Origin: Octopus bimaculoides
Taxonomy: Eukaryota
DNA: 46,898 bases
Direction of reading: 5' to 3'
NCBI RefSeq assembly: GCF_001194135.2
Contig: NC_069007.1
Coordinates: 4,174,718 to 4,221,615, forward strand
Position numbers and translations under genes: made by a program. The notes below the pieces were generated by a model. The model was not told the origin of the DNA, did no database searches, and was given only the letters and a program-made list of their open reading frames with translations. Positions 241-38,643 of the stretch are shown here, in pieces (position 1 is the first letter of the stretch; every line of letters begins with the position of its first letter).

Positions 241-312
241 GTATCTCAACGGAAACGCATTGCAGTACATATCTTCAAGAATATTTCAGTATCTGCTATC
301 TTTGACGGTTAT
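241..312 (+). CDS. aGPCR exon: LRR unit (72 nt, phase 2-2)
   Basis: ttctttag|g...gttat|gtaagt; [23 protein letters not shown](I), 24-aa LRR period. Confidence 0.9.
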
Positions 313-3300
313 GTAAGTGAAACGCTAATGTTTTTGATTTCTTGTGAATATTTTCAATGCATGCACAATTGTAAAATAAACAGATTTGACTTACACCATG
401 ACTGCTAGAATAAGAGCTTCATTATCACGCTGTGGTGTTTCGAAGAATGTCTGTTAATGAAACAGTCGTAGACATTAGTTAGTTTTATATTTTTTTTTAT
501 TCTTTTACTTGTTTCAGCTATTTGCCTGCGGCCACAATGAAGGAACGCCAGGACTTATTCCTTGTAATCTTCGTACTTATTCTATCGGTTTCTTTTGCCG
601 AACCGCTAAGTTACGCGGACGTAAACACACCAACATCGGCTGTCGATTGATGTCGGTGGTGGTGGGGACAAATACAGACACAAATATATATATATATANN
701 NNNNNNNNNNNNNNNNNNNNNNNNNNNNNNNNNNNNNNNNNNNNNNNNNNNNNNNNNNNNNNNNNNNNNNNNNNNNNNNNNNNNNNNNNNNNNNNNNNNN
801 NNNNNNNNNNNNNNNNNNNNNNNNNNNNNNNNNNNNNNNNNNNNNNNNNNNNNNNNNNNNNNNNNNNNNNNNNNNNNNNNNNNNNNNNNNNNNNNNNNNN
901 NNNNNNNNNNNNNNNNNNNNNNNNNNNNNNNNNNNNNNNNNNNNNNNNNNNNNNNNNNNNNNNNNNNNNNNNNNNNNNNNNNNNNNNNNNNNNNNNNNNN
1001 NNNNNNNNNNNNNNNNNNNNNNNNNNNNNNNNNNNNNNNNNNNNNNNNNNNNNNNNNNNNNNNNNNNNNNNNNNNNNNNNNNNNNNNNNNNNNNNNNNNN
1101 NNNNNNNNNNNNNNNNNNNNNNNNNNNNNNNNNNNNNNNNNNNNNNNNNNNNNNNNNNNNNNNNNNNNNNNNNNNNNNNNNNNNNNNNNNNNNNNNNNNN
1201 NNNNNNNNNNNNNNNNNNNNNNNNNNNNNNNNNNNNNNNNNNNNNNNNNNNNNNNNNNNNNNNNNNNNNNNNNNNNNNNNNNNNNNNNNNNNNNNNNNNN
1301 NNNNNNNNNNNNNNNNNNNNNNNNNNNNNNNNNNNNNNNNNNNNNNNNNNNNNNNNNNNNNNNNNNNNNNNNNNNNNNNNNNNNNNNNNNNNNNNNNNNN
1401 NNNNNNNNNNNNNNNNNNNNNNNNNNNNNNNNNNNNNNNNNNNNNNNNNNNNNNNNNNNNNNNNNNNNNNNNNNNNNNNNNNNNNNNNNNNNNNNNNNNN
1501 NNNNNNNNNNNNNNNNNNNNNNNNNNNNNNNNNNNNNNNNNNNNATATATATATATATATATACCACAGACTTCTTTCAGCTTCTGTCTACCAAATCCAC
1601 TCACAAGGTTTTGGTCGGCCCAAAGCTATAGTAGAAGACACTTGCCAAGGTACCACGCAGTGAGACTGAAACACCAACCTCAGTGTTTAACCGGTACTTA
1701 TTTTATCGACCCCGAAAGCGATGAAAGGCAAAGTATACCATGGCGGAATTTGAACTCAGAATGTAAAGACGGACGAAATGCCGCTAAGCATTTTGTCCGG
1801 CTTGCTAACGATTCTGCCAGCTCACTGCCTTCATTGTAGTCAATATTGAAAACATATTTGTACCATAGATGAGAATGTAACATAAAAACCATATTGTGCA
1901 CATAATATATTCTCGTTGTTTTGTTTTACATAGTGTTTATTTTGTTCTGCATTTTGCTCGTGGGGAATCACAGAAGCATTTGGTTTCTCTTAGTGAGATT
2001 GATGGAACCTATTCTCGCCCAAACTCCACCGACAGGAGAACCATGAAGAGGTGTAAGCAACTGTACCGTGGACATGAAAATTACTTTCTTATTGTTGACT
2101 AAAGAGAAATTGTGAAAATTATTGTACGAGAGGAAACAGATTTATTATTTTTTACATAACTTAGAAGCAGCGCTGCGGATGTGCCAACATGCACGAGCTT
2201 GGGACATGGCCGCCCTCACACACTTCTCATGAAGGATTCCGGAAGGAGCTTCATAGACCACTGCAGAGACGCTTCCGGAAAAATTTCAGTAACCGTTGGG
2301 AAACCGATTATAGCAGTGACTCGACCAATTCCTAGCAATATCTGAAGGAGGAAATTTTGTATTTCAAAATATTATTATAATATCAGACTATGGATAGTGA
2401 AGTGCACTCTGCATTGTTGCGCCATTCAAGACACGTCACATTTGACAAACAATACACAATGCTTCAAGCGAACTACAATACTCTCCTCTCTTTTACTTAT
2501 TTTAATTTAGATAATATTTGCTTTTTTTGTCTTTCAGAAATTTGAGCCGAAATCAAATACAAAAAATTGAAGATGGCACTTTCTTATTCCTCCCCAAAAT
2601 AACTGAGATGTAAGTAGTGCAAAACTCTTTGTCTATTGGAAATTTAAGTTAACTTGTTTCACTAAAATCATGAAAGGTAATCAATTCTCAATAGTTTGTT
2701 TAATACAATTGACAATAAATAGCAGTCAAGCTGCTTTAAATTTCAGTGGGTCAAAATGATTACTCCCGAGCAATGTGTTTTGTCATTGTACGAGATACTG
2801 TCTGTGTTCAAATAACATGAGGAGTAGTTTGATTTAATTTCGGGTCTTCCTGCACAAGACCCGAAGTTTTAGGAGAGGGGGCCAGTCGATTAGACCGACC
2901 CCAGTACGCAACTGGTACTTAACACATACATACGCACACACATACATACTGTGACGCCATCACAGTATTTCCATCTGATATCATTTACCGTATTTGATGG
3001 CCTATAAGACACACCTTTTTTTTTTTTTTACCTAAAAATGGCAACCGATGCTGGTGTGTTTACGTCCCCGTAACTTAGCGGTTCGGCAAAAGAGACCGAT
3101 AGAATAAGTACTAGGCTTACAAAGAATAAGCTCTGGGGTCGATTTGCTCGACTATAAAAGGCGGTGCTCCAGCATGGCCACAGTCAAATGACTGAAACAA
3201 GTAAAAGAGTAAAAGAGTGAGAGTAATCGCCAACTCTATGTTTATACCGAATGTGGATGCAATAAATTGTTTATAATTACCGGTAATAACATAAAGTTAT

Positions 3301-6300
3301 ACAGGTAAGTGGAGGAATTAAAACATTATTTTAGTGGTAATTTATTTTACAAAAGTATAGCCTAGGCTAGGGTGCGTTCTATGTACTCGTGCGTCTTATA
3401 GGCCATCAAATACGGTATAAATAAAATTGACTAAAGTAAACAAACTAAATTCGCACGAAAATAAATATATTTGCTAATAAAAGGCTGCAATTAGAACCTA
3501 TCCTTAATTCATATAGATATCTTCTCCCCTAACAAAATATATGCGTTATTAATGATAAAGCTAACTGTCCCCTTTAATCTAATGTTGATTAAATACGTAC
3601 AACCATTATGCTTATTCTTGGATAAAGAAAACCCCTGTTCTATATTTAAGGGATGAGGCATTACGAAGATTATTTACGTTTGATTGATATTTGTCCTCAT
3701 CTTGTTTGTTGTTAATACAACGTTTCGGCTGATATACCCTCCAGCCTTCATAATAATAATAACATCGAAAAATACCTTTGGAATGAGAACCCAAGTTCGA
3801 AATTTCCCCAAGACACCAGATAAAGGCTGGAGGGTGTATCAGCCGGAACGTTGTGTTAACACACAAGATGAGGACAAATATCCGTCGAATGTAAATAATG
3901 TAAATAAGAAAACCTCTGTCATGAAAATATATTTACTAAGTACTGAATATACTTTCTTCTACACTTTTAAAATTTAGATTAGTATAGTGTAGAGAAATCA
4001 TTCACTTCTATGGTACGAACTACTTTAATCTTTTGCAGCTTGTGTAGAAATTCATTATTACACCTGGTACTCCAAGATAAGTTAGTACCTTAATTATAAC
4101 AAAATATGTTTTTGCAACACCTTATAAAGGCTGACCTAACAACGTTTAATTGCATCATTAAGTAATGTAGACAGCTATATATGGGTGCACATTCTGGCAA
4201 CTTCAAACATCTACTCTTATAGGGGACCTCTTTAAGTCATTTGGAGTAAGAAACCAATTTTGGCGTAGCGTTATCCTATTCTTCTACGCTGAAACCCGAA
4301 GTAGATCTAGAATAGTAAGTACGTCTTCGACGATGTCACGGACGGCTACGAATGGGTTAAATTAGTGGTTCTCAACCGAGGTCCACATGACCCTTGGGGT
4401 CCATACAAAATTTTGGTGGTAAAGTTTATCTGCAATAAACTGGTTATACTTGTGCAATGCACAAAATATTTTAACAATTTTTTAATACAATTCCTAATAA
4501 TATTTAATTTTAAAAAATACAAAAGGTTTTTTATTTAAACATCGAATGACTATGAGGGTCCATCCAAGTAAAATAGGAATGAAAAAAAGGGTTCACAGGC
4601 AAAAAATGTTTGAGAAACACTGGGTTAAATGTTTAAGTACTTCACAAATAATAATGATGATGATGATGATGATGATGATAGTAATAGCGAAATAGAGCCA
4701 TTGCATGTGTTTATTACTAGTACAATGTCCCTGCCTGGGAGGCGCAATGGTGCAGTGGTTAGGGCAGCGGACTCGCGGTCATAGGATCGCGGTTTCGATT
4801 CCCAGACCGGGCGTTGTGAGTGTTTATTGAGCGAAAACACCTAAAGCCCCACGAGGCTCAGGCAGGGGATGGTGGCAAACCCTGCTGTACTCTTCCACCA
4901 CAACTTTCTCTCACTCTTTCTTCCTGTTTCTGTTGTGCCTGTAATTCAAAGGGTCAGCCTTGTCACACTGTATCACGCTGAATATCCCCGAGAACTACGT
5001 TAAGGGTACACGTGTCTGTGGAGTGCTCAACCACTTGCACGTTAATTTCACGAGCAGGCTGTTCCGTTGATCGGATCAACTGGAACCCTCGACGTCGTAA
5101 GCGACGGAGTGCCAACAACAACAACAACAATGTCCCTGCCTGGCACAGGCCCTCGGTCGGTTACGATGACGGGCATTCTAGATGGTCTGGTCAAGAGAAC
5201 AATCTGTTCATGAAATCAACGTGTAAGTGGATGGACCCTCGAAAGACACGCGTTCCCTTAACGTAGTTCTCAGGAATATTCAACGTGACACAGAATTTGA
5301 CAAGGCTGGCCCCTTGTGAATTACAGGTACTGATCATGCTTGCCTGCTGAGTGAATGGAACAACGTGAAATAAAGTGTCTTGCTCAAGAGCACAACGCGC
5401 TGCTAGGAATCGAACTCACAACCTCACGTTCGTGAGCAGAATAGTTTAAGAACTAAGCCACGCACCTTCACATGTCCCTGCCTAGAGACCACTAAAAAGA
5501 TGGTTTTAACACCTTTTGAAAAAAACCCGCACGAGTCATAACTTTTATATATCTGCTAAGCTGGGTGGAGGAGTTTGTCTTCCCCTCGCAAAGATAAGGA
5601 CACAGGAAATGTGTCAAGGCCTAATAGGAAGCGGTCCAGCTTCCTAGGGCTAAATAGCAGTAGTATATTCCCTTATTGGGACTGTCACGTTAAGTTGACA
5701 GTATACAACTACTTTATCGCATCACTACTGCTTAAGTCTCTCTGAGAGGTTTAGAAATTTATTATTTCTAAATAATCTCTATTTCTTATCAAATCAAATA
5801 GAAGTTCCTCCATTGGTCAGGAGCAAATTCATTTAGAATTATCTTTGTATTTACAGTGACCTCACTCGTAATATCGGGATGGAGTGTGGATGTCACCTAC
5901 CGGTATTGGTAAACTATACAGAGAAAGCATTCAACAGACGTCTGGTAGTTTTAGGAGCGTGTAATACAAGTGTGGAAAATAGTCGAGAAGGATTCAGGTT
6001 TTGGAAGATATTGAAATATTCGCAATGTCAAAGTTAGTAAAATCTTTTTTGTTTCTGTTGTTACTCTTTTAAGTACCACTAACAAAACTCCAGAGTATTC
6101 TCTGCTGTTCACATTATGATGATACACATATATATGCATGCATGCATTCCTACCTACCTACCTACCTACCTACCTACCTACCTACCTACATACATACATA
6201 CAAAGCCATAGCTAACCTGTCTTCATCGTGGACCACCACCTTGAACTTAAATACAAGAAGTGATTGTAATATAACTGATAGAGTACAGTAACGCAGAGGT

Positions 6301-10749: not shown

Positions 10750-10805
<56 letters not shown>

Positions 10806-10845: not shown

Positions 10846-10877
<32 letters not shown>

Positions 10878-11176
10878 TATTATTATTGTTCAGTAGTTTT
10901 ATTTTTATAACGTGCTTTCACTTCACTACCGAGCGCAGCTCTGTGTGCCTTGGGTATGTGCTGTGGTTTGCTGTGGTGCTCTTATGGTTACTGTATTGAA
11001 AGTGTTTTGCGTAGGATGTGTGCAGTACCCAGTAGTGCAATTTTCTGTATGTTATATATATTTGTAAGTCCTGGTGTTTTTGTTATGTAATTGTCTGAAT
11101 ATTTTTTTGTTATATCTAAGGCACCTACTATGATAGGAATTGTTTCTGTTTTTAGATTCCACATTCGAGTTACCTC

Positions 11177-11233
<57 letters not shown>

Positions 11234-30800: not shown

Positions 30801-32985
30801 GTGGACAGCAAATACTTTTTATGGGCAATTTGATTTATATTTTTTAATCGAAATCTTTTAATTGACAATAAACCTATTTGTTAAATACTGTTAAATAAAT
30901 AAATGTAAAAATATATGTTATTTTAAGCAAATATTTATGTATAAATTTCATAAGCGTTTATAAGGGGGTCCCTAAGCTAAAGCCTGAAATATAAAGGGGT
31001 CCGCAAGTCAAAAAGTTTGAAAACCCCTGGTATATAACAACAAGGTGTCTACAATGTCTACTGGAAACAATGAAACAATATTGGCTAAAACCTATGGGTA
31101 AGACCTCTAGGTATGTTCTATTGTAAAAATAACATTGTTAATAAATCTTCAAAGTTGACAGAATCATTAAGCACATCAGACAAAATGTATTGTAGTATTT
31201 CTTCCATTTCCTTAAGTTCTGTGTTCAGATGCCACTGATGCCAACTTTGTCTTTCGCCCATATAGGATCGATACTAAGGCTTGTAGTATCAATTAACTTA
31301 TCCTTCTAAAATTACGGCTTCCGTGCCAAAAATTTCGAACCATTATTTATGTATTGAGTGACTTTATATTTCAATGCTCTGTTCCACTCGGAAATGAGTT
31401 GTACTTGTATTTCAAAGGGCCAACCTTGTCACACTCTGTGTCATGCTGAATCTCCCTGAGAACTACATTAAAGGCATGCGTGTCTGTGGAGTACTCAGCC
31501 ACTTGCATGTTAATTTCACAAGCAGGTTGACTTCGTGACTGATACGGTGTCATACTTCAATAGATTAAATATCATTATTTCTTTTTTTTTCTCCTTCAGG
31601 CGGCGAGCTGGCAGAATGGTTAGAACGCCGGGCGAAATGCCTGCAGTATTTCACCTGTCGGTACGTTCTGAGTTTAAATTCTGCTGAGGTCGACTTTTGT
31701 CTTTCATCCTTTCGGAATCGATAAATTAAGTACCAGTGAAATACTGGTGTCGATGTAATCGACCATACTCCTCCCCCAAATTTCAGGCCTTGTGCCTACA
31801 GTAAAAAGGATTATTTCTTTTTTCCTTAAAACGGCAAGATGGCAGAATCGTTAGCACGCCGGGCAAGATGCTTAGCAGCCTGTCTTTACGTTTTGAGTTC
31901 AAATGCCACCAAGGTCAACTTTGCCTTTCATCCTTTTTTTTGAGGGGGTGGGGGTCAATAAATTAGTACCAGTTACACACTGGGGGAGATCGATATAATT
32001 GACTTAATCCCCTACCCCGCAAAACTGCTTGCCTTGTGCCAAAATTTAAAACCAATATTTCTTTATTCGTTATTTCAGAAATCTATGGAAATCATTGGCT
32101 TCAAAGATTTTAGTAAGCTTGTGCAGTTCTTTGGCAATCACAAACTTTATCTTTGTTGCTGGGATGCAAGCGCATGCTGTAAAACCAATAGCTAATTGTA
32201 AGGTAAGTGAAAATGCATTTATGCTTGCATATGTTTTGCTTTATATTAAACATAATGAACGACAATCTGTTACTTCAAATATATTTACTTCCGCTAGTGT
32301 GGAGGCGCAATGGCCCAGTGGTTAGGGCAGCGGACTCGCGGTCATAGGATCGCGGTTTCCATTCCCAGACCGGGCGCTGTGAGTGTTTATTGAGCGAAAA
32401 CACCTAAAGCTCCACAAGGCTCCGACAGGGGATGGTGGCGAACCCTGCTCTACTCTTTCACCACAACTTTCTCTCACTCTTTCTTCCTGTTTCTGTTGTG
32501 CCTGTAATTCAAAGGGTCAGCCTTGTCATCCTGTGTCACGCTGAATCTCCCCGAGAACTACGTTATGGGTACACTGGTCTGTGGAGTGCTCATCCACTTG
32601 CACGTTAATTTCACGAGCAGGCTGTTCCGTTGATCGGATCAACTGGAACCCTCGACGTCGTAAGCAACGGAGTGCCAACAAAAACTTCCTCTAGTAACAG
32701 CCCAGGTTGCAGCTCTTTCCTAAATCTTTCACGACTAATAAATGTTACGTTTAATGTTTGTGCTGTTTGCTTTTGTATTTTTTTATTTGATCTGTTCTAT
32801 GGTGATGACAGCAATTTTTATGAACAGAAATACGAAATAGTAAATGATGAAGTTTTAATTCCAGAAATTGTATTTTATATAAAGTCTTCCAAACCTCCCC
32901 TCCCCAAAACATTTATCTCACCCCTGTTCAACTTCCTGTGAATTTTGTTGCATCTATTTGAGCAATTCTATCTAATAAAGCATCA

Positions 32986-33018
<33 letters not shown>

Positions 33019-34086
33019 GAGTGAGAGAGCAGTGCATGCCATCAAAGTGACACTGGGGTAAAATATACTAAGACCAGTATACCCATCATGATTACCTCTC
33101 TGATAAGGGTAAACCAGGCACATGCATCACAACCATATGTGCGCGACATGGTGATCTCATATCAAGTTAAACAGCACATGACCTTGCAGGTGTGGCCCAG
33201 TTAGAATTTTCTTCAGGTCGAGTAGCCCATCCCACTCAAAAGGTCCCTGAATAAGGTTTGTTTAAGGATGTTGAGCGAAACACCCATGTTTCCAAAGGTG
33301 AATTATTCAAACCCCAAAGAATTCCTCTCAACACATGGCTATGATGCTCCCCCACTACTTCTGCTCGTGATCAGAGATGCACATATCGTCAGCCACCAAG
33401 GAACATGCTCAACTGGTTAAGGTCAAACAACATTATTATTATTATTATTACCTAATAGGACTGTGGTGGATTGGCAAAAGCATTAAATGAAATTCCTTTC
33501 AGGTACTGAATTACGTCACTGCATTGAACTATCAGCAGGGTCTGGTTTTGATCTTCATCTTTTTTGGATCGATAATATAAAATATCAATCAAGTACCAGC
33601 GCCGATACTGTTAGCTATATCCCCACCCCTGCAAAACAATATATTCAATATATATTTGAGAGCGTGTGTCAATGTCAGAAGTCATTATTGTTAGTGTTGA
33701 TGTTGTTGTTATTGTTGTCATTGCAGACAGTGGCTGCTATGTTACACTACTTCCTTCTGGCGTCTTTCATGTGGATGACTATAGAAGCAATTAATGTTCT
33801 CTTAAGTGTGGTTATTACATTCAAAACGTATCAGACATCTTTCATGATGAGAACTTCAATTTTGGCATGGGGTATGTATAACGATTTTTGTTACTTTATC
33901 TCTCTCCCCTTCATACACACACACACACACACGCACACACATAATTTCCCTATCTGTCTGTCTCTTTCTCTCTTTGATAGACGTATAAGCTAAAAATAAT
34001 ACGAGTAAAATCTAAAGTAAAGATCAAATAAATAGTACTTGCGCTTCATTAGCCCCAAAAACTGACCATCTCCACGCATAACAATG

Positions 34087-34117
<31 letters not shown>

Positions 34118-37100
34118 GATGGTCTGGTCTCTCCCGTCGAAGATCATGTATGATTGCTCAGCTATTGCCGAACGACCTGCACCAATAATTTGTTTATAAT
34201 GATCGAATGTATGTGCCGTGCATTATTTCACTCCCTTCATCAAATAGTAAAAACTGATCTGTGCGTGATACGAAATAAAACAGTGACTTCTTTTGTACTT
34301 GACATTTTTCCGGAGAAAAAAAAAAAGCAGTCAAAACATCGATTCAAGTGTCACGTATTTATAATTTTAAATATTAATTAAACATTAAATTCAAATTACG
34401 AAAAACGTAAATAAACAAACGAAGCTTACTTTTTTAGAAGCGTTGAGATGTCTTTTAGAAAGTTAAAGAAGTGATTTTAAATTCTCAATCGCAGAATAAT
34501 GCTAATAATATAGCCTGAACAGGATAAACTATCCCTATTTTGCACCTACACTTTTCTCTGCAAAATAGGGATAGTTTATCCTGTTCAGGCTATAATTTTA
34601 AATATTAATAAATATCTACTTATTTATCTTCATTTATGTAAATATCGTTGTCAGGTCTTCCAGCTATCATTGTTATACTTACTTTGTCAATCAATTCCAC
34701 AAACAATTATACGAGAATTGCAGAAGTGTAAGTATTTCTGTGTTTTATCCATCTTATTTTTCCCTGGTCTTCTTCGCTACTAACACTGAAAAAAGCAACT
34801 TTCCATACAAAGAATGTCGTGACCTAAATTCTCAGACGTTTCTCAGACGCTCACCTTCTTATTCTCGTGCCGCACCATTGGAATTGTTAAAACAATGGTA
34901 ACGAGATTCATAATGCCGTTTGATATTTGAGACTCTCTTCACAGTTTTCGACAAATTAAACAAACTCATTTTCTTTGGTGCTCGATGAAAAACTCGTTAA
35001 GTGTCCACTCCTGATTAAAATTTCCGCATTCAAAATCCACTTAACTTTCCTTGTTTTCCATTTTATGTTATTATTCAAGAGATGCAGGATCCTGGACAGG
35101 AAGGCGAAATGTATGACTAAAAATAAGTCAGAACAAAAGCAAATGTGATAATCTACTGAAAATGTATAACAAGGAATAATCATACAAAAACATTATCAGA
35201 AGAATTTCTCTACTTGGTCAGTGTGGCCACTTTGTTTCTCATGAATCTTCTGTTAGGCTCAATGGATTGCAGTGATGCCAGTTCAATAAATAACAATGTT
35301 GTTGCTGTTGGCACTCCGTCGCTTACGACGTCGAGGGTTCCAGTTGATCCGATCAACGGAACAGCCTGCTCGTGAAATTAACGTGCAAGTGGCTGAGCAT
35401 TCCACAGACACGTGTACCCTTAACGTAGTTCTCGGGGATATTCAGCGTGACACAGTGTGACAAGGCTGGCCCTTTGAATTACAGGCACAACAGAAACAGG
35501 AAGTAAGAGTGAGAGAAAGTTGTGGTGGAAGAGTACAGCAGGGTTCGCCACCATCCCCTGTTGGAGTCTCGTGGAGCTTTAGGTGTTTTCGCTCAATAAA
35601 CACTCACAACGCCCGGTCTGGAATCGAAACCGCGATCCTATGACCGCGAGTCCGCTGCCCTAACCACTGGGCCATTGCACGTCCACTAATAAATCACAAT
35701 AAGCAGCAATTATTTCTCAACAAAACTTCTTACCGGTGACCATCAAACACAAGCGAAAAGTGATTGTAGACAGTGTATGAATGTAAGAAGGCCTGCGCTG
35801 TACATGTTTCATTTTACCAAAAATAAGATGCCGCGCACCTGCACACCTGTGTCATTGGTGTTCGTGTATATGTGCCCGGTAAAAACAGACGGACAGGCAA
35901 TACCGAAATGCTGGAGTTGAGGCAAAGTGTGGTTTGAGATAAATGAAATCTTAAAAATTCTGAATTTCCACAAAACCCTCGCGGGCCGGATCAAGGCCTT
36001 CGCGGGCCGGATGTGGCCTGCAGGCCGGGGATTGCGGACCCCTTCATAAAGCAATGACAAAATACCAACATCAAACCCAAATAAATCTCCTCTCCTTAAC
36101 CTTCAGCCAACATCTTCACCTATCAACCCACACCCTACAAACATATACATCAAACCTGTCCTACCGCATTCCCCATCTTTTTACACAACTGCTTTCTTGA
36201 TTTACCTACATTACACCTGAATTTCAAAGGGGCCATATTGTGGGTCAGTCTGAAGATGGACATAGTCAACGCAAAATCACAGAAAACCTTGGGGTCCTGC
36301 TTTCTACAGTTAATAGAGTGATTGTGAAATTCACCAGAGAGGGGAAGGAGTCCACATCATCTCACCCAGATCAACCAGAGCCCTCTAACAAGACCCTTCT
36401 GTTTGTTAAGAGAAGTGTGGAGGATAATCCTTGTTGCAAGGCCACTAACATAGCAGAACAAGTTGATGTCGGTCCCAGAACAGCTGTCAGGTATCTCCAC
36501 AAACTTGGTTACTATGGCAGAGCAGCAAGAAGGAAGCCACTTCTTCGACCAGGCAACATCAAGTAGAGAAAAGATTGGGTCAGTGAGATGATGGAGAGGC
36601 CACTAGTATTTTAGGACAGTCATATTCTCTGATGAAGTGGAGGCGCAATGGCCCAGTGGTTAGGGCAGCGGACTCGCGGTCATAGGATCCGGTTTCGATT
36701 CCCAGACCGGGCATTGTGAGTGTTTATTGAGCGAAAACACCTAAAGCCCCACGAGGCTCCGGCAGGGGATGGTGGCGAACCCTGCTGTACTCTTCCACCA
36801 CAACTTTCTCTCACTCTTACTTCCTATTTCTGTTGTACCTGTAATTCAAAGGGTCAGCCTTGTCACACTGTGTCATGCTGAATATCCCCGAGAACTACGT
36901 TAAGGGTACACGTGTCTGTGGAGTGCTCAGCCACTTGCACGTTAATTTCACGAGCAGGCTGTTCCGTTGATCGGATCAACTGGAACCCTCAACGTCGTAA
37001 GCGACGGAGTGCCAACAACAACAAATTCTCTGATGAGTTCAGATTTGCTGTATTTCCTGACAGGCAGTTGTGATATAGAATGAAGTTAGTAATAAAACAG

Positions 37101-37270
37101 GCGTATTGCTCTACCTCCGGTATTCGAGTACCATTTCCTTCCACCTCGTTGCGCATTTATGTAATGCTATGCATTCCTGATTTTTTTTTACTCATTTGTA
37201 ATATATTCTTTGAATATTTTTGGTGTGATGTCTATTTCTGTCTCTTTCTCTTTCTTTGCCTTTCTTTTGC

Positions 37271-37303
<33 letters not shown>

Positions 37304-38643
37304 CCTTTCTCTCTCTTTCCCTCCATAATAATTTACTTCTTCCTTCGTTATAACTGTCTATCTCTCCTCTCGTCTCCAATCCTACAGGACATTTTAATTT
37401 TCCTTTGTTACCCCACATACCTGTCTTGCGGCCGCATGGCCTTTTTTCTTGTATAAGTATATTTCATTTTGTCATGTTTGTTTTCAACATTGTCCAGTAC
37501 ATTCGTTAGCTATTCCCAGTGGACAGATTTCCTTTCGTAATTGTCTTTCTATTTCTTTTGTAGCTGTTGGTTATCCAACACACCTTTCTATGTTGCTTTC
37601 TTGACTCCCGTGGTTATCATTCTTACTTTAAACCTTGGCATATTCCTTTACGTTATCTGGCGAGTTGTCACGATGCAAAAATTCAGCAATGTTATGCACA
37701 AAACAAGAAAGGTACGCTTTTGGGGCGCCGTTGGTCTTTGCATCCTTCTGGGTTTTACCTGGATCATAGCATTCTTTTCTTTTGGTAAAGCGGCGGAAGC
37801 ATTTCAATATCTCTTTGCTATCTTCAATACGCTTCAAGGAACGTTTATCTTCATATTCTACTGTATATACAAGAAAGATACCAGAGATATCATTCACCAG
37901 TTTATACGTGATCAAAAGGAAAAATTTGACAAGAAGAGAGAGAGTAAGTGCAATTTCGTCTTTCTTACTTCTGCAACTACCAAAATTAGCATCGATGTTG
38001 TCATAATAAGCAATGTGGAGGCGCAATGGCCCAGTGGTTAGGGCAGCGGATTCGCGGTCATAGGATCGCGGTTTCGACTTCCAGACCGGGCGTTGTGAGT
38101 GTTTATTGAGCGAAAACACCTAAAGCTCCACGAGGCTCCGGCAGGGGATGGTGGCGAACCCTGCTGAAGAAACGCGTTTTTTCTATCATTCAATTTCTTT
38201 ATTTCGTTATATGTGGTTTGTTCCTGAAGAATATGTTTGTTTTCTCAACATATGAAACTATAAGTAGCGCTTTAATACATGTGTTGTTACCTTTAAATAA
38301 ATAATGTGTGTGTGTGTGTGCATATAGGTGTGTATATATAAGTGTGCTTCTATGAGAAACATTCACTCTTGAGGTCCGTTATTGTTCACCATAACTTACG
38401 GGCCGTGTAAAGTGTGTATTGTTAATCACTGCTTCATCTTCGGTAATGATATCTTTTCATTTATAAGAAAAAAGTTACTGGCAAATGGAGTTACATAGGA
38501 ATATAATGTTTAAGTATGATTGTGCTTTTTCTTTTTCTTTCAAAAGAATAATATTTTTTATACTTTTTTTTCCATTGTTTCCAGATACATATGATAAAAT
38601 GAAAACAGAAGGTGGAACAGCAGAAACGGAGATACAGAATTAA
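241..38643 (+). CDS. Adhesion GPCR (ADGRG-like 7TM) with LRR-LRRCT-Ly6/uPAR-SEA-like-HormR-GAIN ectodomain; 21 exons in window, 5'-partial
   Basis: Exons 241-312, 2538-2609, 5857-6032, 8117-8208, 11303-11486, 12373-12592 (spans gap), 13609-13664, 14409-14566, 16380-16494, 18342-18496, 19695-19926, 22181-22346, 22736-22894, 25266-25394, 27483-27632, 28327-28448, 32079-32202, 33727-33871, 34655-34727, 37564-37943, 38585-38643. All have AG/GT boundaries, matching phases and no visible stops; GPS motif and 7 TM segments recovered. Confidence 0.93.
499..1670 (-). mobile_element. tRNA-derived SINE family B copy interrupted by a gap
   Basis: Tail ttttacttgtttcag...; body ccaaatccactcacaagg...tagtagaagacacttgcc shared with other copies. 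Confidence 0.75.
1690..1832 (-). mobile_element. SINE family C copy
   Basis: Reverse complement of ggcagtgagctggcagaatcgttagc...gagttcaaattccgcc...ctttcatcgctttcggggtcgataaa. Confidence 0.7.
2538..2609 (+). CDS. aGPCR exon: LRR unit (72 nt, phase 2-2)
   Basis: ctttcag|a...gagat|gtaagt; [23 protein letters not shown](I) fits the typical extracellular LRR consensus. Confidence 0.93.
2988..3415. mobile_element. Tc1/mariner-superfamily MITE with nested SINE-B fragment (about 3042-3222)
   Basis: Perfect 23-bp TIRs ccgtatttgatggcctataagac / gtcttataggccatcaaatacgg flanked by TA on both sides. Confidence 0.85.
3637..3905. mobile_element. Inverted pair of Penelope-like element termini carrying a degenerate hammerhead motif
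   Basis: 3637-3751 (-) and 3766-3905 (+) share aaggctggagggt(a/g)tatcagccg(a/g)aacgttgt...caagatgaggacaaatatc in opposite orientation, separated by (AAT)n. Confidence 0.65.
4363..4622. mobile_element. hAT-type MITE
   Basis: TIRs tagtggttctcaa / ttgagaaacactg; exact 8-bp TSD ggttaaat (4355-4362, 4623-4630). Confidence 0.85.
4737..5130 (+). mobile_element. Young tRNA-derived SINE family A, full length
   Basis: A-box-like tggtgcagtgg, B-box-like ggtttcgattccc, (CAA)n tail, 17-bp TSD acaatgtccctgcctgg. Confidence 0.9.
5142..5471 (-). mobile_element. Older relative of SINE family A
   Basis: Diverged tail and body homology; flanked by atgtccctgcct at 5130-5141 and 5472-5483. Confidence 0.7.
5857..6032 (+). 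CDS. aGPCR exon: LRR C-terminal cap (LRRCT)
   Basis: tttacag|t...caaa|gttagt; [58 protein letters not shown] has the CxC...C...C LRRCT pattern; phase 2 to 1. Confidence 0.88.
6205..6792 (+). pseudogene. Degraded R4/Dong-like non-LTR retrotransposon RT fragment
   Basis: RGTFLGDNL...[11 protein letters not shown]...DIG.FG.DK...YRYLGVDE...[13 protein letters not shown] with stops and frameshifts. Confidence 0.75.
7003..7387 (+). mobile_element. SINE family A, full length
   Basis: gtggaggcgcaatggcccagtgg head; 13-bp TSD tagtgaccgttca. Confidence 0.92.
8117..8208 (+). CDS. aGPCR exon: Ly6/uPAR-like domain, N-terminal half
   Basis: ctatag|ac...aatgag|gtaaac; [30 protein letters not shown] (LxCxxC start); phase 1 to 0. 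Confidence 0.88.
8530..8960 (+). pseudogene. Tx1/L1-like ORF2 remnant: APE endonuclease start joined to ORF2 C-terminus
   Basis: [19 protein letters not shown]...[25 protein letters not shown], then [26 protein letters not shown], similar to 26000-26119. Confidence 0.6.
9060..10610 (-). pseudogene. R4/Dong-clade (RLE) LINE, 5'-truncated and degraded
   Basis: RT end ([17 protein letters not shown]), zinc knuckle CRMCG...C, RLE motif DFQTD...RRPDVV...IIDVAVP...EKVDKY, C-terminus [17 protein letters not shown]. Confidence 0.88.
10737..10888. repeat. (ATT)n/(ATC)n microsatellite
   Basis: Direct inspection. Confidence 0.95.
10888..11177 (-). mobile_element. Short 3' end of a second R4/Dong-like LINE embedded in (TAA)n
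   Basis: [20 protein letters not shown]...[20 protein letters not shown] plus 3' UTR; (ATT)n arrays on both sides. Confidence 0.85.
11303..11486 (+). CDS. aGPCR exon: Ly6/uPAR-like domain, C-terminal half
   Basis: gttatag|tct...gttg|gtgagt; [61 protein letters not shown] with terminal CCxxxxCN motif; phase 0 to 1. Confidence 0.9.
11629..12258 (-). mobile_element. SINE family B: partial copy plus full-length copy with internal CA/TA microsatellite
   Basis: Head revcomp gcaggagtagctgtgtggtaagtagc..., B-box-like gggttcagtccc, tail gaaacaagtaaaag. Confidence 0.85.
12373..12592 (+). CDS. aGPCR exon(s) mostly hidden in the 190-N gap
   Basis: Acceptor ttttcttccgtag|g just before the gap; after it only the frame TAPREIAEV is open and ends at gtt|gtaagt; bridges a phase-1 exon to a phase-0 exon. 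Confidence 0.72.
12754..13331 (+). pseudogene. maT (DD37D) Tc1/mariner transposase C-terminal remnant with probable right end
   Basis: [14 protein letters not shown]...Q*DSTLSH...[12 protein letters not shown]...VEAEGGFIE*; 37 residues between 2nd and 3rd Asp; ends ...catcctg|TA. Confidence 0.85.
13609..13664 (+). CDS. aGPCR exon: SEA-like segment
   Basis: ccattgcag|atg...tgtgg|gtaagc; [18 protein letters not shown](G); phase 0 to 2, the phase needed to join 14409. Confidence 0.8.
13822..13980 (+). mobile_element. pogo/Tigger-like MITE left end
   Basis: TA|cagtaatccctcgactgtcgcg start; second TIR not found. Confidence 0.5.
14409..14566 (+). CDS. aGPCR exon: SEA-like segment, C-terminal part
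   Basis: tatttcag|g...gaaa|gtaagt; [52 protein letters not shown]; phase 2 to 1. Confidence 0.82.
14615..15172. mobile_element. Two SINE family C copies (+ 14615-14850, - 14985-15172) around an (AAT)n tract
   Basis: ggcagcgagctggtagaatcgtta head; revcomp copy with cgaccccgaaaggataaaaggcaaagttgacc. Confidence 0.7.
16060..16280. repeat. Compound (CTG)/(CTA)/(CAC) triplet microsatellite
   Basis: Direct inspection; source of poly-T/poly-Y pseudo-ORFs. Confidence 0.95.
16380..16494 (+). CDS. aGPCR exon: HormR/HRM domain, part 1
   Basis: cattttcag|ac...aactg|gttcgt; [37 protein letters not shown](C) matches C..WP.T..G....C...A.R.C. Confidence 0.92.
16578..16964 (+). mobile_element. SINE family A, full length
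   Basis: Near-identical to 7003-7387; no clear TSD. Confidence 0.9.
17668..18060 (+). mobile_element. Two diverged SINE family C copies
   Basis: ggcggtgagctggtagaatcg... and ...gagttcaaattccaccgaagtcg...catccttccgaggtcaataaa. Confidence 0.7.
18342..18496 (+). CDS. aGPCR exon: HormR part 2 / start of GAIN
   Basis: ttttcag|t...gaac|gtgagt; [51 protein letters not shown] (W..PD.S.C motif). Confidence 0.92.
18523..18914 (-). mobile_element. SINE family A, full length
   Basis: 13-bp TSD tgtgtttcgaaat (18510-18522, 18915-18927). Confidence 0.92.
19091..19345 (-). mobile_element. SINE family B 3' half
   Basis: ttttactcttttacttgtttcagtcatttgactg...ggacaaacacagac. Confidence 0.8.
19695..19926 (+). 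CDS. aGPCR exon: GAIN subdomain A (helical)
   Basis: gttgcag|ga...agcag|gtaaaa; [76 protein letters not shown]. Confidence 0.9.
20016..20385 (-). mobile_element. SINE family A variant
   Basis: Same head and tail with small indels; approximate TSD atag(c/t)attagt. Confidence 0.88.
20525..20865 (+). mobile_element. Tandem partial SINE family C copies
   Basis: ctttgcctttcatcctttcg...atcgacttaatccctttgtctatccttg present twice. Confidence 0.75.
21037..21316 (-). mobile_element. SINE with family A head and body but a different 3' tail
   Basis: 14-bp TSD atttctgaataatt; tail ...gaaaccgggcccatgagcctggctaggctttgaaaagggcgaaaaaa instead of ...ggagtgccaacaac. Confidence 0.85.
21419..21595. repeat. (TAG)n/(CAG) microsatellite
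   Basis: Direct inspection. Confidence 0.95.
22181..22346 (+). CDS. aGPCR exon: GAIN
   Basis: ctcacag|a...actacg|gtacag; [55 protein letters not shown]. Confidence 0.9.
22736..22894 (+). CDS. aGPCR exon: GAIN subdomain B
   Basis: cctccag|gta...tatagg|gtatgg; [53 protein letters not shown] (ISLP.SL motif). Confidence 0.9.
23586..23831 (-). pseudogene. Tc1 (DD34E-type) transposase fragment running into a gap
   Basis: TVKHGGGSL...[64 protein letters not shown]. Confidence 0.85.
25266..25394 (+). CDS. aGPCR exon: GAIN subdomain B
   Basis: tttgcag|gca...gatcag|gtaata; [43 protein letters not shown] (INS.IIAAS...L.EPV.I.F). Confidence 0.92.
25545..25800 (-). mobile_element. Unclassified repeat family D fragment
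   Basis: aaccccaaagaat...ggctatgatgct...ccactact...ggttaaggtcaa shared with 33019-33431. Confidence 0.6.
26000..26300 (+). mobile_element. Tx1/L1-like LINE 3' fragment
   Basis: [39 protein letters not shown], homologous to 8820-8950. Confidence 0.55.
27483..27632 (+). CDS. aGPCR exon: GPS proteolysis motif
   Basis: tttcag|aat...ctaatg|gttggt; [50 protein letters not shown]. Confidence 0.96.
28327..28448 (+). CDS. aGPCR exon: TM1
   Basis: tggcag|gac...tttaa|gtaagc; [40 protein letters not shown](K). Confidence 0.94.
28474..28682 (+). mobile_element. SINE family B 5' half
   Basis: ggctgtgtggcaaaaagcttgg...ggttcagtcc...ccttgtgagtggatttggtag. Confidence 0.8.
28687..29059. repeat. C-rich minisatellite, about 19-20-nt unit (CATCCTGACAGACCCxTCCCC), runs into gap
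   Basis: Repeated catcctgacagac cores. Confidence 0.9.
29901..30231 (-). mobile_element. SINE family A, 3' end lost in gap
   Basis: Near-identical to other copies. Confidence 0.9.
30240..30738 (+). pseudogene. CR1-like LINE RT C-terminal remnant
   Basis: [14 protein letters not shown]...[12 protein letters not shown]..., later LEKR...DL; heavily degraded. Confidence 0.5.
30739..31029. mobile_element. hAT-type MITE
   Basis: TIRs cagggattttcaaac / gtttgaaaacccctg; 8-bp TSD gtatagaa / gtatataa. Confidence 0.82.
31598..32060 (+). mobile_element. Two SINE family C copies
   Basis: ggcggcgagctggcagaatgg... and ggcaagatggcagaatcgttagc... heads with ctttcatcc domain. Confidence 0.75.
32079..32202 (+). 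CDS. aGPCR exon: TM2
   Basis: tatttcag|a...tgtaag|gtaagt; [41 protein letters not shown]. Confidence 0.94.
32299..32683 (+). mobile_element. SINE family A, full length
   Basis: TSD acttcc(g/t)ctagt. Confidence 0.92.
33019..33431 (-). mobile_element. Unclassified repeat family D, 5'-truncated, embedded in (TAA)n
   Basis: (ATT)n on both sides; homologous to 25545-25800; no tRNA head. Confidence 0.7.
33727..33871 (+). CDS. aGPCR exon: TM3-ICL2-start of TM4
   Basis: cattgcag|aca...tggg|gtatgt; [48 protein letters not shown](G). Confidence 0.95.
34509..34594. repeat. Perfect 36-bp inverted repeat with 14-nt loop
   Basis: tatagcctgaacaggataaactatccctattttgca / exact reverse complement at 34559-34594. 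Confidence 0.95.
34655..34727 (+). CDS. aGPCR exon: TM4-ECL2
   Basis: ttgtcag|gt...gaagt|gtaagt; [23 protein letters not shown](V). Confidence 0.92.
35298..35686 (-). mobile_element. SINE family A, full length
   Basis: TSD aataaat(a/c)acaat. Confidence 0.92.
35980..36045 (-). mobile_element. hAT (Charlie-like) terminal remnant
   Basis: revcomp aggggtccgcaatccccggcctgcaggccacatccggcccgcg. Confidence 0.55.
36225..37065 (+). pseudogene. Tc1 transposase N-terminal remnant interrupted by a SINE
   Basis: HTH-like [22 protein letters not shown]...[11 protein letters not shown]...; FSDE motif duplicated as TSD around the SINE. Confidence 0.85.
36637..37024 (+). mobile_element. SINE family A, full length
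   Basis: 12-bp TSD attctctgatga (36624-36635, 37025-37036). Confidence 0.93.
37564..37943 (+). CDS. aGPCR exon: ECL2-TM5-TM6-TM7-helix 8
   Basis: ttttgtag|c...gaga|gtaagt; [27 protein letters not shown]...[10 protein letters not shown]...[26 protein letters not shown]...KKRE. Confidence 0.95.
38015..38166 (+). mobile_element. SINE family A 5' half
   Basis: Head through ...gaaccctgctg, then homology stops. Confidence 0.85.
38585..38643 (+). CDS. aGPCR terminal coding exon
   Basis: gtttccag|at; (N)[18 protein letters not shown] then TAA at 38641-38643; phase matches the preceding donor. Confidence 0.8.

What the first reader, a model, noticed from the sequence alone, without database searches (positions are those of the whole stretch)
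241..38643. Adhesion GPCR with an unfamiliar ectodomain: LRR + LRRCT + Ly6/uPAR three-finger-like domain on a SEA-HormR-GAIN-7TM core
Seen: the spliced exons read in one frame from LRRs, through a 12-Cys domain ([26 protein letters not shown]...RSCRAYNEC...TC...[11 protein letters not shown]), to HormR, GAIN/GPS and a 7TM; the only unreadable part is the exon in the 12374-12563 gap. Established: LxCxxC...CCxxxxCN defines LU/three-finger domains, usually small GPI-anchored or secreted proteins (Ly6, Lynx1, sleepless/quiver, snake toxins), several of which modulate nicotinic receptors or ion channels. Vertebrate ADGRG6/GPR126 has SEA-HormR-GAIN preceded by CUB-PTX, and ADGRA has LRR-Ig-HormR. 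Inference: a lineage-specific receptor that puts an LRR ligand surface and a three-finger module on an ADGRG-like core; I know no characterised aGPCR with an LU domain.
Basis: partly seen in the sequence, partly recalled or inferred. Interest (0 to 1): 0.88.

Follow-up and report, generated by a model that had tools for sequence, protein, structure and literature searches.

The report
Octopus adhesion receptor with Ly6 domain
This Octopus bimaculoides DNA holds most of one adhesion-type G-protein-coupled receptor gene whose outer part carries leucine-rich repeats and a Lynx2/LYPD1-like three-finger domain. The gene is real, but it belongs to an octopus receptor expansion that is already published, and the public annotation cuts it in two at an assembly gap.

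Summary
On the + strand, 21 exons (241 to 38643) with AG/GT borders join in one frame. The frame is shown directly on each side of the gap exon, not across it. The products equal two RefSeq proteins of Octopus bimaculoides. XP_052833075.1 (337 aa, named LINGO-like) carries LRR-LRRCT-LU. XP_014778286.1 (740 aa, named ADGRG6) runs from the SEA-like domain to the 7TM.

The split sits exactly at the 12374-12563 gap. Both halves match one 1148-aa O. sinensis protein best. That gap-free locus is collinear with the window and has a 77-nt coding exon where the gap lies, a length that would close the frame. I conclude it is one gene.

The 12-Cys module is a three-finger (LU) domain. Its profile hits LYPD1/Lynx2 (E 6e-5, all 12 Cys aligned), and every other PDB hit is a three-finger protein. 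The predicted model is weak (pLDDT 62).

HormR, GPS (HL/T) and the 7TM are present.

The architecture is not cephalopod-specific: a gastropod and a nemertean have it, and LU-bearing aGPCRs were noted in starfish. The family is the octopus aGPCR expansion of Ritschard et al. 2019, which did not report the LU domain. Interest is moderate.

The parts
241..312 (+). LRR exon (72 nt, intron phase 2-2): [23 protein letters not shown]
   Evidence: AG/GTAAGT borders; identical to P0116 residues 136-159; Pfam LRR_8 E 4.6e-11 on the joined N-terminus
2538..2609 (+). LRR exon (72 nt, phase 2-2): [24 protein letters not shown]
5857..6032 (+). LRRCT cap exon (176 nt, phase 2-1): [20 protein letters not shown]...KYSQCQ
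   Evidence: 98% identical to P0116 in tblastn, the only mismatch being the split codon at the exon's 3' border
8117..8208 (+). LU (three-finger) domain, first exon (92 nt, phase 1-0): [31 protein letters not shown]
   Evidence: LU evidence
11303..11486 (+). LU domain, second exon (184 nt, phase 0-1): SVCMTNV...[16 protein letters not shown]. The LU module as a whole is flanked by phase-1 introns.
12373..12592 (+). Exon interrupted by the assembly gap 12374-12563. One base is readable before the gap and 29 bases (..TAPREIAEV) after it. By homology it encodes the first strand of the SEA-like domain. The expected true length is about 77 nt.
   Evidence: Acceptor and GTAAGT donor. Both flanks align to O. 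sinensis L002 24133-24204 and 24253-24454, where a 77-nt phase 1-0 exon encodes PWNFVFHFVYRRNSTSKTASQEIVEI.
13609..13664 (+). SEA-like domain exon (56 nt, phase 0-2): [19 protein letters not shown]. Its ATG is used by RefSeq as the start of the 740-aa model.
14409..14566 (+). SEA-like domain exon (158 nt, phase 2-1): [22 protein letters not shown]...ILIRE
   Evidence: fold from AF2 of the O. sinensis homologue
16380..16494 (+). HormR exon 1 (phase 1-2): [37 protein letters not shown]
   Evidence: Pfam HRM E 1.9e-4 for the window's own domain, 10 of 10 paralogues hit
18342..18496 (+). HormR exon 2 (phase 2-1): [37 protein letters not shown]...
19695..19926 (+). GAIN domain exon 1
   Evidence: (Pfam GAIN E 8.4e-6)
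22181..22346 (+). GAIN domain exon 2
22736..22894 (+). GAIN domain exon 3
25266..25394 (+). GAIN domain exon 4
27483..27632 (+). GPS exon: ...CSCNHL|TNFALLM, holding the autoproteolysis motif and the start of the tethered agonist
   Evidence: Pfam GPS E 7.4e-14
28327..28448 (+). Rest of the Stachel region and TM1
32079..32202 (+). TM2 exon
33727..33871 (+). TM3 exon
34655..34727 (+). TM4 exon
37564..37943 (+). TM5-TM7 exon
   Evidence: Pfam 7tm_2 E 1.3e-38 over the joined 7TM
38585..38643 (+). C-terminal exon with the stop codon (..[12 protein letters not shown])
13416..13430 (+). Short terminal exon used by the RefSeq 337-aa model (adds AFSA and a stop after the LU domain). It is either a minor truncated isoform or a modelling patch.
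   Evidence: it lies outside the block conserved with O. sinensis

Best explanation
The window holds all but the 5' end of one Octopus bimaculoides adhesion GPCR gene. Its ectodomain reads signal peptide, LRRNT and LRRs (partly upstream of the window), then LRRCT, a LYPD1/Lynx2-like LU three-finger domain, a SEA-like alpha/beta domain, HormR and GAIN/GPS, followed by a secretin-class 7TM.

Shown:
- the exon chain;
- its identity to two RefSeq proteins;
- its one-to-one, collinear match to a single O. sinensis gene;
- the domain assignments.

Inferred from established aGPCR biology:
- The GAIN domain cleaves itself at HL|T.
- The N-terminal fragment stays bound and uses the LRR surface and the LU fingers to bind partners on other cells, on the matrix or in cis.
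- Binding or pulling exposes the tethered agonist TNFALLMDV..., which activates the 7TM and G proteins.

The gene belongs to the octopus-expanded aGPCR family (Ritschard group 3). At family level it is expressed in axial nerve cord, suckers and skin, and shows positive selection. That fits a diversified contact-recognition role.

RefSeq's split into a 'LINGO-like' gene and an 'ADGRG6' gene is an artefact of the assembly gap inside one exon.
For: Exon chain and RefSeq identity:
- 21 exons with AG/GT borders; those on each side of the gap exon join in one frame.
- The C-terminal model is identical to XP_014778286.1 (740 aa), and the N-terminal exons are identical to XP_052833075.1.

One gene rather than two:
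- Both halves have the same best relative, O. sinensis XP_029652540.1 (1148 aa).
- The N-half matches its residues 1-335 at 62.5% (next best 46%). The C-half matches residues 400-1148 at 71% (next best 54%).
- The O. sinensis locus has no gaps and is collinear with the window in exon and intron blocks.
- It has a 77-nt phase 1-0 coding exon exactly where the window's gap lies, with both flanks alignable at 81-83%.
- The 740-aa RefSeq model has no signal peptide and starts in helix 1 of the SEA-like domain. The 337-aa model ends 4 residues after the LU domain with no anchor.
- More than 20 octopus paralogue models and an mRNA-like 4.2-kb contig with an uninterrupted 1155-aa ORF (SRR21372857) carry the whole architecture in one product.

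Domains:
- LRR_8 E 4.6e-11; 7tm_2 E 1.3e-38, GPS E 7.4e-14, GAIN E 8.4e-6; HRM in 10 of 10 paralogues.
- LU: the profile against PDB sequences gives LYPD1 at E 6.4e-5 with all 12 Cys aligned, and all 19 hits are three-finger proteins.
- Pfam hits among members come only from the three-finger clan.
- Foldseek's top 28 hits are all three-finger folds.
- SUPERFAMILY SSF57302 hits a paralogue in Ritschard's Table S3.
- The GPS motif reads CSCNHL|TNFALLM.

Family-level expression and selection: PMC6408891.
Against: - The frame across gap 12374-12563 cannot be read, and with the nominal 190 N it is off by one.
- No transcript of this very gene that spans LU to SEA was found.
- RefSeq has two models here, and the 337-aa one uses a phase-compatible terminal exon at 13416.
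- The LU model is low confidence (pLDDT 62) and no Foldseek hit passes E 0.1.
- No Pfam LU-clan model reaches its gathering score.
- Ligands, cleavage and G-protein coupling are all inferred.
- This gene's own expression was not looked up.
Confidence: 0.8

Rival explanations
1. There are two adjacent genes, as annotated in RefSeq. One is a secreted LRR-LRRCT-LU protein of 337 aa ending in AFSA. The other is a separate aGPCR of 740 aa starting at the ATG at 13609.
For: - RefSeq models XP_052833075.1 and XP_014778286.1 exist.
- The exon at 13416 has an AG acceptor and the right phase.
- Short LRR-LU models exist at other octopus loci (P0001-P0004), so truncated N-terminal isoforms may be real.
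Against: - The split coincides with the assembly gap.
- A conserved coding exon with acceptor and donor straddles that gap, and both models omit it.
- One O. sinensis gene covers both halves collinearly.
- The 740-aa product lacks a signal peptide and begins inside a folded domain.
- The AFSA exon lies outside the sequence conserved between the species.
Confidence: 0.1
2. The 12-Cys module is not a Ly6/uPAR (LU) domain proper. It is instead a TGF-beta/activin-receptor-type ectodomain or another small disulphide-rich fold.
For: - Activin_recp is about as good as the LU models in Pfam (best E 5.6e-5 against 1.1e-4).
- ALK2 is the second PDB hit at E 0.0028.
- The TGF-beta receptor I ectodomain tops Foldseek.
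- The AF2 model is weak.
Against: - The best sequence match is LYPD1, with all 12 Cys and the terminal CCxxxxCN aligned over the full domain.
- The activin-receptor alignment drops Cys positions.
- Both groups belong to the same three-finger superfamily, so this rival changes the sub-class and not the fold.
Confidence: 0.1
3. The locus is a decaying or non-functional paralogue in a fast-evolving tandem family, and the hidden exon part carries a defect.
For: - The frame over the gap is unverified.
- The family is large and diverges fast, with only 71% identity to the closest O. sinensis gene.
- RefSeq also lists a truncated isoform X2.
Against: - All 20 readable exons are open, with canonical splice sites.
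- The invariant and nearly invariant LU residues (12 Cys and the Asn of the CN motif), the HL|T site, the Stachel and the 7TM motifs are kept.
- The orthologous exon length would restore the frame.
Confidence: 0.05

Closest known systems
Octopus-specific adhesion GPCR expansion, 'group 3' of Ritschard et al. 2019 (PMC6408891)
   Same: It is the same family. The paralogue A0A0L8FLR8 (LRR, LU, 7TM and a Death domain) is listed in their group 3. The paper reports LRR, GPS and 7TM, clustered genes, positive selection, and expression in axial nerve cord, suckers and skin.
   Different: The paper does not describe the LU, SEA-like or HormR modules. Only one SSF57302 line appears in its Table S3. I did not locate this gene's own entry in their tables.
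Vertebrate ADGRG6 / GPR126
   Same: It is among the best vertebrate matches over HormR-GAIN-7TM (E 8.7e-64, 28% identity, 95% coverage). It shares the order of an alpha/beta domain, HormR, GAIN and 7TM, and the HL|T site with a TxFAxLMD Stachel.
   Different: There is no CUB and no pentraxin; LRR-LRRCT-LU stands in their place. The SEA assignment here is only fold-level. No tree was built, so orthology is not shown.
ADGRA2/ADGRA3 (GPR124/GPR125)
   Same: LRR and LRRCT at the N-terminus, followed by HormR, GAIN and 7TM. The precomputed Pfam family on the paralogues is named GAIN_ADGRA3.
   Different: ADGRA has an Ig domain where this receptor has LU plus a SEA-like domain. The 7TM matches ADGRG better than other vertebrate groups.
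LYPD1 / Lynx2 and other single-domain Ly6/uPAR proteins
   Same: Same 12-Cys pattern, with LxCxxC at the start and CCxxxxCN at the end. It is the best solved-structure match (6zss, E 6.4e-5). NCBI already names one octopus fragment 'LYPD1-like'.
   Different: Those are small GPI-anchored or secreted proteins. Here the domain is an internal module of a receptor of about 1100 aa, flanked by phase-1 introns.
Starfish LyAr2 / LyAp2 (Asterias rubens, Acanthaster planci)
   Same: An LU domain in the N-terminal ectodomain of a predicted adhesion GPCR, grouped with Lynx2 (PMC9410279, PMC11595613).
   Different: My LU profile did not recover them at E 0.001 or better. I could not check whether they have LRR, SEA-like or HormR modules. 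They are known only from automatic annotation and qPCR.
LRR-LU-HormR-GAIN-7TM proteins of Nucella lapillus (KAL8620952.1) and Tubulanus polymorphus (XP_074663095.1)
   Same: Same domain order, a 12-Cys LU and the [12 protein letters not shown] GPS motif.
   Different: Only 28% identity for Tubulanus; I did not measure it for Nucella. They are single hits rather than an expanded family. Common descent versus convergence was not tested by a tree.

Membership tests
Adhesion GPCR | Secretin-class 7TM (7tm_2) | tested here: met
   Pfam 7tm_2 E 1.3e-38, 133 bits against a cutoff of 20.6, covering profile positions 3-250 of 250
Adhesion GPCR | GPS motif directly before TM1, with the HL|T/S cleavage triad | tested here: met
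   Pfam GPS E 7.4e-14; the sequence reads CSCNHL|TNFALLM 14 residues before the TM1 region
Adhesion GPCR | Full GAIN domain | tested here: inconclusive
   Pfam GAIN E 8.4e-6 but 25.8 bits against a cutoff of 26.5. Precomputed GAIN_ADGRA3 (PF26588) is recorded on the RefSeq product and its paralogues.
Adhesion GPCR | Autoproteolysis and tethered-agonist activation | not testable with these tools
   Only the motif is seen; this needs biochemistry
ADGRG6 (GPR126) subfamily | CUB and pentraxin domains at the N-terminus | tested here: not met
   No CUB or PTX hit; the N-terminus is LRR-LRRCT-LU
ADGRG6 (GPR126) subfamily | 7TM/GAIN closest to ADGRG among vertebrate aGPCRs | tested here: met
   By E-value rank only: ADGRG6 8.7e-64 and ADGRG2 9.6e-64, against ADGRL1 3.9e-40 and ADGRF 3.5e-17. 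No phylogeny was made.
Ly6/uPAR (LU, three-finger) domain | Cys framework with LxCxxC at the start and CCxxxxCN at the end | tested here: met
   10 columns (9 Cys and the Asn of the CN motif) are invariant across 20 sequences, and 3 further Cys are nearly invariant. The window has 12 Cys, and the LU profile aligns all 12 Cys positions with LYPD1.
Ly6/uPAR (LU, three-finger) domain | Significant profile match to a solved LU domain | tested here: met
   LYPD1 6zss at E 6.4e-5 over the full domain. SLURP-1, LYPD6, LYPD6B, Lynx1 and CD59 follow, and all 19 hits are three-finger proteins.
Ly6/uPAR (LU, three-finger) domain | Pfam gathering score of a LU-clan model | tested here: not met
   Window: UPAR_LY6_2 at 15.7 bits against a cutoff of 31.5. 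The best E-values among members are 1.1e-4 (UPAR_LY6_2) and 8.5e-5 (Toxin_TOLIP); their bit scores were not listed.
Ly6/uPAR (LU, three-finger) domain | Three-finger beta fold | tested here: inconclusive
   AF2 of the O. sinensis homologue's domain (60% identical to the window's) gave pLDDT 62 and pTM 0.55. The Foldseek top 28 are all three-finger folds, with Lynx2 at probability 0.97 and TM 0.48-0.52, but the best E is 0.13.
Ly6/uPAR (LU, three-finger) domain | Small secreted or GPI-anchored protein (the usual context) | tested here: not met
   The domain is internal to a multidomain receptor. The 337-aa RefSeq form has no hydrophobic GPI signal.
SEA domain | Alpha/beta sandwich fold between the adhesion modules and HormR | tested here: met
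   AF2 pLDDT 89.6 and pTM 0.81, with topology beta-alpha-beta-beta-alpha-beta. The model was made on the O. sinensis homologue, because the window's first strand lies in the gap.
SEA domain | Specific sequence or structure match to SEA | tested here: inconclusive
   Pfam SEA hit 1 of 13 paralogues (E 5e-6) and not the closest homologue. The PDB profile search found nothing. Foldseek's top 50 are generic ferredoxin-like folds with no SEA.
HormR (HRM) domain | Pfam HRM match with conserved Cys and Trp | tested here: met
   10 of 10 paralogues hit HRM (best E 7.1e-6). The window's own score is E 1.9e-4 at 22.2 bits, below the 26.2 cutoff. The profile found no PDB match.
LRR with C-terminal cap | LRR repeats followed by a Cys-capped LRRCT | tested here: met
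   LRR_8 E 4.6e-11. The cap CGCHLP...C...C is read directly from the sequence. LRRNT and the signal peptide are seen in the RefSeq product upstream of the window.
ADGRA (GPR124/125) subfamily | Ig domain between LRRCT and HormR | tested here: not met
   No Ig hit; LU and the SEA-like domain occupy that position

The most novel reading that the evidence does not exclude
LRR-LU-SEA-like-HormR-GAIN-7TM may be an old spiralian aGPCR family, perhaps bilaterian if the starfish LU-aGPCRs are related, that lies outside the nine vertebrate-based families.

In octopus its Lynx2-like finger module may have been multiplied to act on Cys-loop receptors. Candidates are the nicotinic-receptor-like chemotactile receptors of the suckers, engaged in cis or in trans. 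That would couple contact chemosensation or neuronal recognition to G-protein signalling.

A truncated LRR-LU isoform, such as the RefSeq 337-aa product, could then be a soluble modulator.
Probability: 0.1. Interest if true: 0.8.

Novelty: new variant of a known kind. Interest (0 to 1): 0.45.

Why it matters
- It corrects an annotation. Two RefSeq genes ('LINGO-like' and 'ADGRG6') are one receptor, cut at an assembly gap, and the same error may affect other members of the family.
- It adds a domain that the published description of the octopus aGPCR expansion lacks. More than 20 paralogues carry a Lynx2/LYPD1-like three-finger module.
- In vertebrates and flies, such modules are best known as cis-acting modulators of nicotinic receptors, channels and, recently, GPCRs (bioRxiv 10.64898/2026.06.29.735401).
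- That gives concrete candidates for ligand hunting in a family expressed in arm nerve cord, suckers and skin.
- The same architecture in a gastropod and a nemertean shows it is older than cephalopods. That bears on how aGPCR families are classified outside vertebrates.
- It is not a new kind of receptor, and no function is shown.

Tried and rejected
- The first protein search, with LRRCT+LU, returned only four paralogue fragments and missed the identical RefSeq protein P0116. I at first took the N-terminal exons to be unannotated. The exhaustive profile search corrected this.
I used the closest homologue's domain instead, so the LU model is not of the window's own protein.
- The profile of the SEA-like region against PDB sequences found nothing meaningful, and Foldseek gave only generic ferredoxin-like folds.
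- The HormR profile against PDB sequences found nothing. The per-member Pfam scan did work.
- Pairwise BLASTP of the window's LU against LYPD1 is weak on its own (E 0.021), and a simple global alignment misplaces two Cys. Only the profile alignment lines up all 12.
- I looked for a second paralogue or other exons in 38644-46898 and on the minus strand, and found none.
- I looked for a counterpart of the O. sinensis 111-nt cassette exon in the window, and found none.
- I considered a hidden LRR exon in gap 699-1544 and rejected it, because neither RefSeq nor O. sinensis has an extra repeat there.
- I did not use the third protein search, because the exhaustive HMM search had already covered distribution at higher sensitivity.
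- I did not locate this gene's own row in Ritschard's expression table.
Full report
SOURCE AND OVERALL PICTURE

The window is 46,898 bases at 39% G+C, with seven runs of N. It is genomic DNA of Octopus bimaculoides: the spliced product of 13609-38643 is identical to RefSeq XP_014778286.1, and the upstream exons are identical to XP_052833075.1. Both proteins are recorded on a scaffold of 22,553,649 bases.

CHECK OF THE OBSERVATION

I rebuilt the gene by hand from open stretches and splice signals.

N-terminal exons (+ strand):
- 241-312 and 2538-2609: two 72-nt LRR exons, intron phase 2-2.
- 5857-6032: LRRCT.
- 8117-8208 and 11303-11486: the 12-Cys module.

All five have AG...GT borders and join in one frame. 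They read ...[21 protein letters not shown]...[42 protein letters not shown]...[16 protein letters not shown].

Downstream, 15 exons (13609-13664, 14409-14566, 16380-16494, 18342-18496, 19695-19926, 22181-22346, 22736-22894, 25266-25394, 27483-27632, 28327-28448, 32079-32202, 33727-33871, 34655-34727, 37564-37943, 38585-38643) give 2223 nt. That is 740 codons plus a stop.

Without it the phase of the 14409 exon cannot be reached.

THE GAPS

Four of the five gaps in the finding (699-1544, 15350-15956, 23832-24760, 29060-29900) are intronic:
- The exons on both sides join in frame.
- The joined products equal the RefSeq proteins.
- The 1148-aa O. sinensis homologue P0006 (XP_029652540.1) aligns across each junction without missing residues.

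I fetched the O. sinensis locus (L002, 59.5 kb, no N). Unique exon-plus-intron blocks of the window align to it in the same order and orientation across all five gaps. The scaffold order is therefore sound.

The fifth gap (12374-12563) lies inside an exon:
- The acceptor ttcttccgtag|G sits one base before the gap.
- After the gap come 29 coding bases (..TAPREIAEV) and a GTAAGT donor.
- With the nominal 190 N the frame is off by one, so it cannot be verified in this assembly.
- In O. sinensis both flanks align at 83% and 81%. Between them lies a 77-nt exon, AG..GT, phase 1 to 0, encoding PWNFVFHFVYRRNSTSKTASQEIVEI.
- A 77-nt exon would carry the window's frame exactly from the LU exon (which ends in phase 1) to the 13609 exon (which starts in phase 0).
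- That implies about 47 hidden bases rather than 190.

ONE GENE OR TWO

RefSeq annotates two genes here:
- A 337-aa 'LINGO-like' protein with signal peptide, LRRNT, LRRs, LRRCT and LU. It then adds AFSA and a stop from a small exon at 13416.
- A 740-aa 'ADGRG6 isoform X1' that starts at the ATG at 13609. There is also a truncated isoform X2.

Against two genes:
- The boundary coincides with the gap.
- Both models skip the conserved exon that straddles it.
- The 740-aa product has no signal peptide and starts in the first helix of a folded domain.
- The 337-aa product ends four residues after the LU domain without an anchor.
- The AFSA exon lies outside the block conserved with O. sinensis.
- The two halves share one best relative, P0006. 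The N-half matches residues 1-335 at 62.5% (next best 46%). The C-half matches residues 400-1148 at 71% (next best 54%).

In addition, more than 20 octopus paralogue models carry the whole architecture in one protein. So does a 4.2-kb contig assembled from run SRR21372857, which holds an uninterrupted 1155-aa ORF with UTRs and so looks like an mRNA.

I put about 0.85 on one gene. A truncated LRR-LU isoform is not excluded.

THE DOMAINS

LRR, GPS and 7TM are clear: LRR_8 E 4.6e-11, GPS E 7.4e-14 and 7tm_2 E 1.3e-38.

GAIN is just under Pfam's cutoff (25.8 against 26.5 bits). A newer family, GAIN_ADGRA3, is recorded on the product.

HormR: all 10 paralogues tested hit HRM, and the window's own domain scores E 1.9e-4.

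The Cys-rich module:
- An alignment of 20 copies has 10 invariant columns (9 Cys and the Asn of the CN motif) and 3 further nearly invariant Cys.
- Its profile against all PDB sequences gives human LYPD1/Lynx2 first (E 6.4e-5, full length, all 12 Cys aligned). Next come ALK2, SLURP-1, LYPD6, LYPD6B, a muscarinic toxin-like protein, Lynx1 and CD59. All 19 hits are three-finger proteins.
- Per-member Pfam hits come from the same clan: UPAR_LY6_2, Activin_recp, Toxin_TOLIP, UPAR_LY6, BAMBI and CD59. For the window's own domain the best of them is far below its gathering score.
It is weak, at pLDDT 62.
- Foldseek's top 28 matches are nonetheless all three-finger folds, with Lynx2 at probability 0.97. 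The best E-value is 0.13.
- Independently, InterProScan in Ritschard's Table S3 lists SSF57302 at residues 136-215 of one paralogue. From memory, that is the snake-toxin-like superfamily.

I take the three-finger assignment as about 0.9 likely, with LYPD1 the closest type.

The 'SEA' region:
- AF2 gives a confident beta-alpha-beta-beta-alpha-beta domain (pLDDT 89.6).
- Foldseek returns only generic ferredoxin-like folds.
- Pfam SEA hits 1 of 13 paralogues.
- It is SEA-like in fold and position. Membership is not shown.

Intron phases fit modular assembly by exon shuffling. LU, the SEA-like domain and HormR are each bounded by phase-1 introns (for the SEA-like domain this relies on the 77-nt exon length inferred from O. 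sinensis).

HOW IT MOST LIKELY WORKS

This part is inferred from established aGPCR biology.
- The GPS reads CSCNHL|TNFALLMDV, the canonical cleavage triad followed by a Stachel of the TxFAxLM type.
- The receptor should cleave itself in the GAIN domain and keep its N-terminal fragment bound.
- It should signal when partner binding or force on the LRR/LU end exposes the tethered agonist to the 7TM.
- The LRR arc and the LU fingers are the likely binding surfaces.

For the family, Ritschard et al. report clustered genes, positive selection, and expression in axial nerve cord, suckers and skin. That fits diversified contact recognition. Nothing here shows a ligand, cleavage or coupling.

COMPARISON WITH WHAT IS KNOWN

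The family is Ritschard's octopus-specific class B 'group 3'. The LU-bearing paralogue A0A0L8FLR8, which also has a Death domain, is listed there. That paper names LRR and Death domains but not LU.

The best vertebrate matches are ADGRG6 and ADGRG2. The defining CUB and PTX domains are absent, so I do not file the gene as ADGRG6. ADGRA shares LRR and HormR but has an Ig domain.

LU domains on predicted aGPCRs were noted in passing in starfish. The 2026 aGPCR review does not mention Ly6 or three-finger domains, octopus or cephalopods.

DISTRIBUTION

An exhaustive HMM search of 1.84 billion representative proteins with the LU profile found only 61 proteins at E 0.001 or better. Those that also have GAIN and 7TM are from:
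- Octopus species;
- Argonauta hians;
- the unknown-source contig above;
- the gastropod Nucella lapillus;
- the nemertean Tubulanus polymorphus.

In the three of these I read in full (the contig, Nucella and Tubulanus) the domain order and the [12 protein letters not shown] motif are the same; the Argonauta record is partial. The architecture therefore predates cephalopods.

Other hits are small LU proteins and LU-repeat 'mucin-like' proteins of fishes, abalone and sea cucumber.

VERDICT

It is better than the public annotation.

- The LU domain is real and was unremarked for this family.
- The family is known.
- The architecture is not confined to cephalopods.
- LU-bearing aGPCRs have been seen before.
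- The 'SEA' label is unproven.

I rate the novelty as a new variant of a known kind, and the interest at 0.45.

Noticed in passing
window 4749, 7016, 16591, 18879(-), 20350(-), 21283(-), 30196(-), 32312, 35651(-), 36650, 38028, 43778(-): There are twelve copies, in both orientations, of a roughly 380-bp SINE-like repeat with a tRNA-like head (GGCCCAGTGGTTAGGGCAGCGGA). All are intronic or intergenic. The same element is scattered through the O. sinensis locus. It accounts for many of the long 'ORFs' such as ...[35 protein letters not shown].
   Followed up: partly
window 36201-36563 (+), in the intron between the TM4 and TM5-7 exons: An ORF fragment carries Tc1/mariner-type transposase helix-turn-helix domains (HTH_23 E 2.3e-7, HTH_Tnp_Tc3_2 E 2.5e-6). 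A possible transposase C-terminal fragment at 12999-13160 had no Pfam hit.
   Followed up: partly
window 9162-10610 (-) and 10988-11269 (-), in the intron between the two LU exons: Several open frames on the minus strand look like retroelement remains (for example ...[34 protein letters not shown]...[10 protein letters not shown]). Pfam gave no hit, so their identity is unconfirmed.
   Followed up: partly
L002 20176-20286 (O. sinensis locus): The O. sinensis homologue has an extra 111-nt phase 1-1 cassette exon between LU and the SEA-like domain (RKCVYKTILLETGQTFEKSGSQCECQENGNIICYPK, 4 Cys). No counterpart is found in the readable part of the window, and it is absent from the other paralogues I inspected. 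It may be species-specific or alternatively spliced.
   Followed up: partly
window 13416-13430 and 34727 onward: RefSeq lists truncated products at this locus. One is an LRR-LU form ending in AFSA. The other is isoform X2, which ends after TM4 (..RIAEVYI). Similar short 'isoform X2' LRR-LU models exist at paralogous loci (P0003, P0004). Truncated N-terminal isoforms may be a regular feature of the family, or a modelling artefact.
   Followed up: no
proteins P0113, P0118, P0119, P0121, P0124, P0137, P0120: The octopus LU profile also hits large proteins with 3 to 24 tandem LU-like repeats. These are annotated as mucin-like or psiR-like in teleosts (Gouania, Oreochromis, Salarias), in abalone (Haliotis) and in a sea cucumber. 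This LU-repeat architecture is unrelated to the receptor.
   Followed up: no
protein P0114 / P0155 (O. bimaculoides paralogue): One LU-bearing paralogue has a C-terminal Death domain after the 7TM (Pfam Death E 3.3e-6). This is an unusual intracellular module for an aGPCR. Ritschard et al. already listed it.
   Followed up: partly
window 38644-46898: No exon of this or a paralogous receptor lies downstream of the stop codon on either strand. The region holds two more assembly gaps (39796-40556, 43266-43531), microsatellites and repeats.
   Followed up: partly
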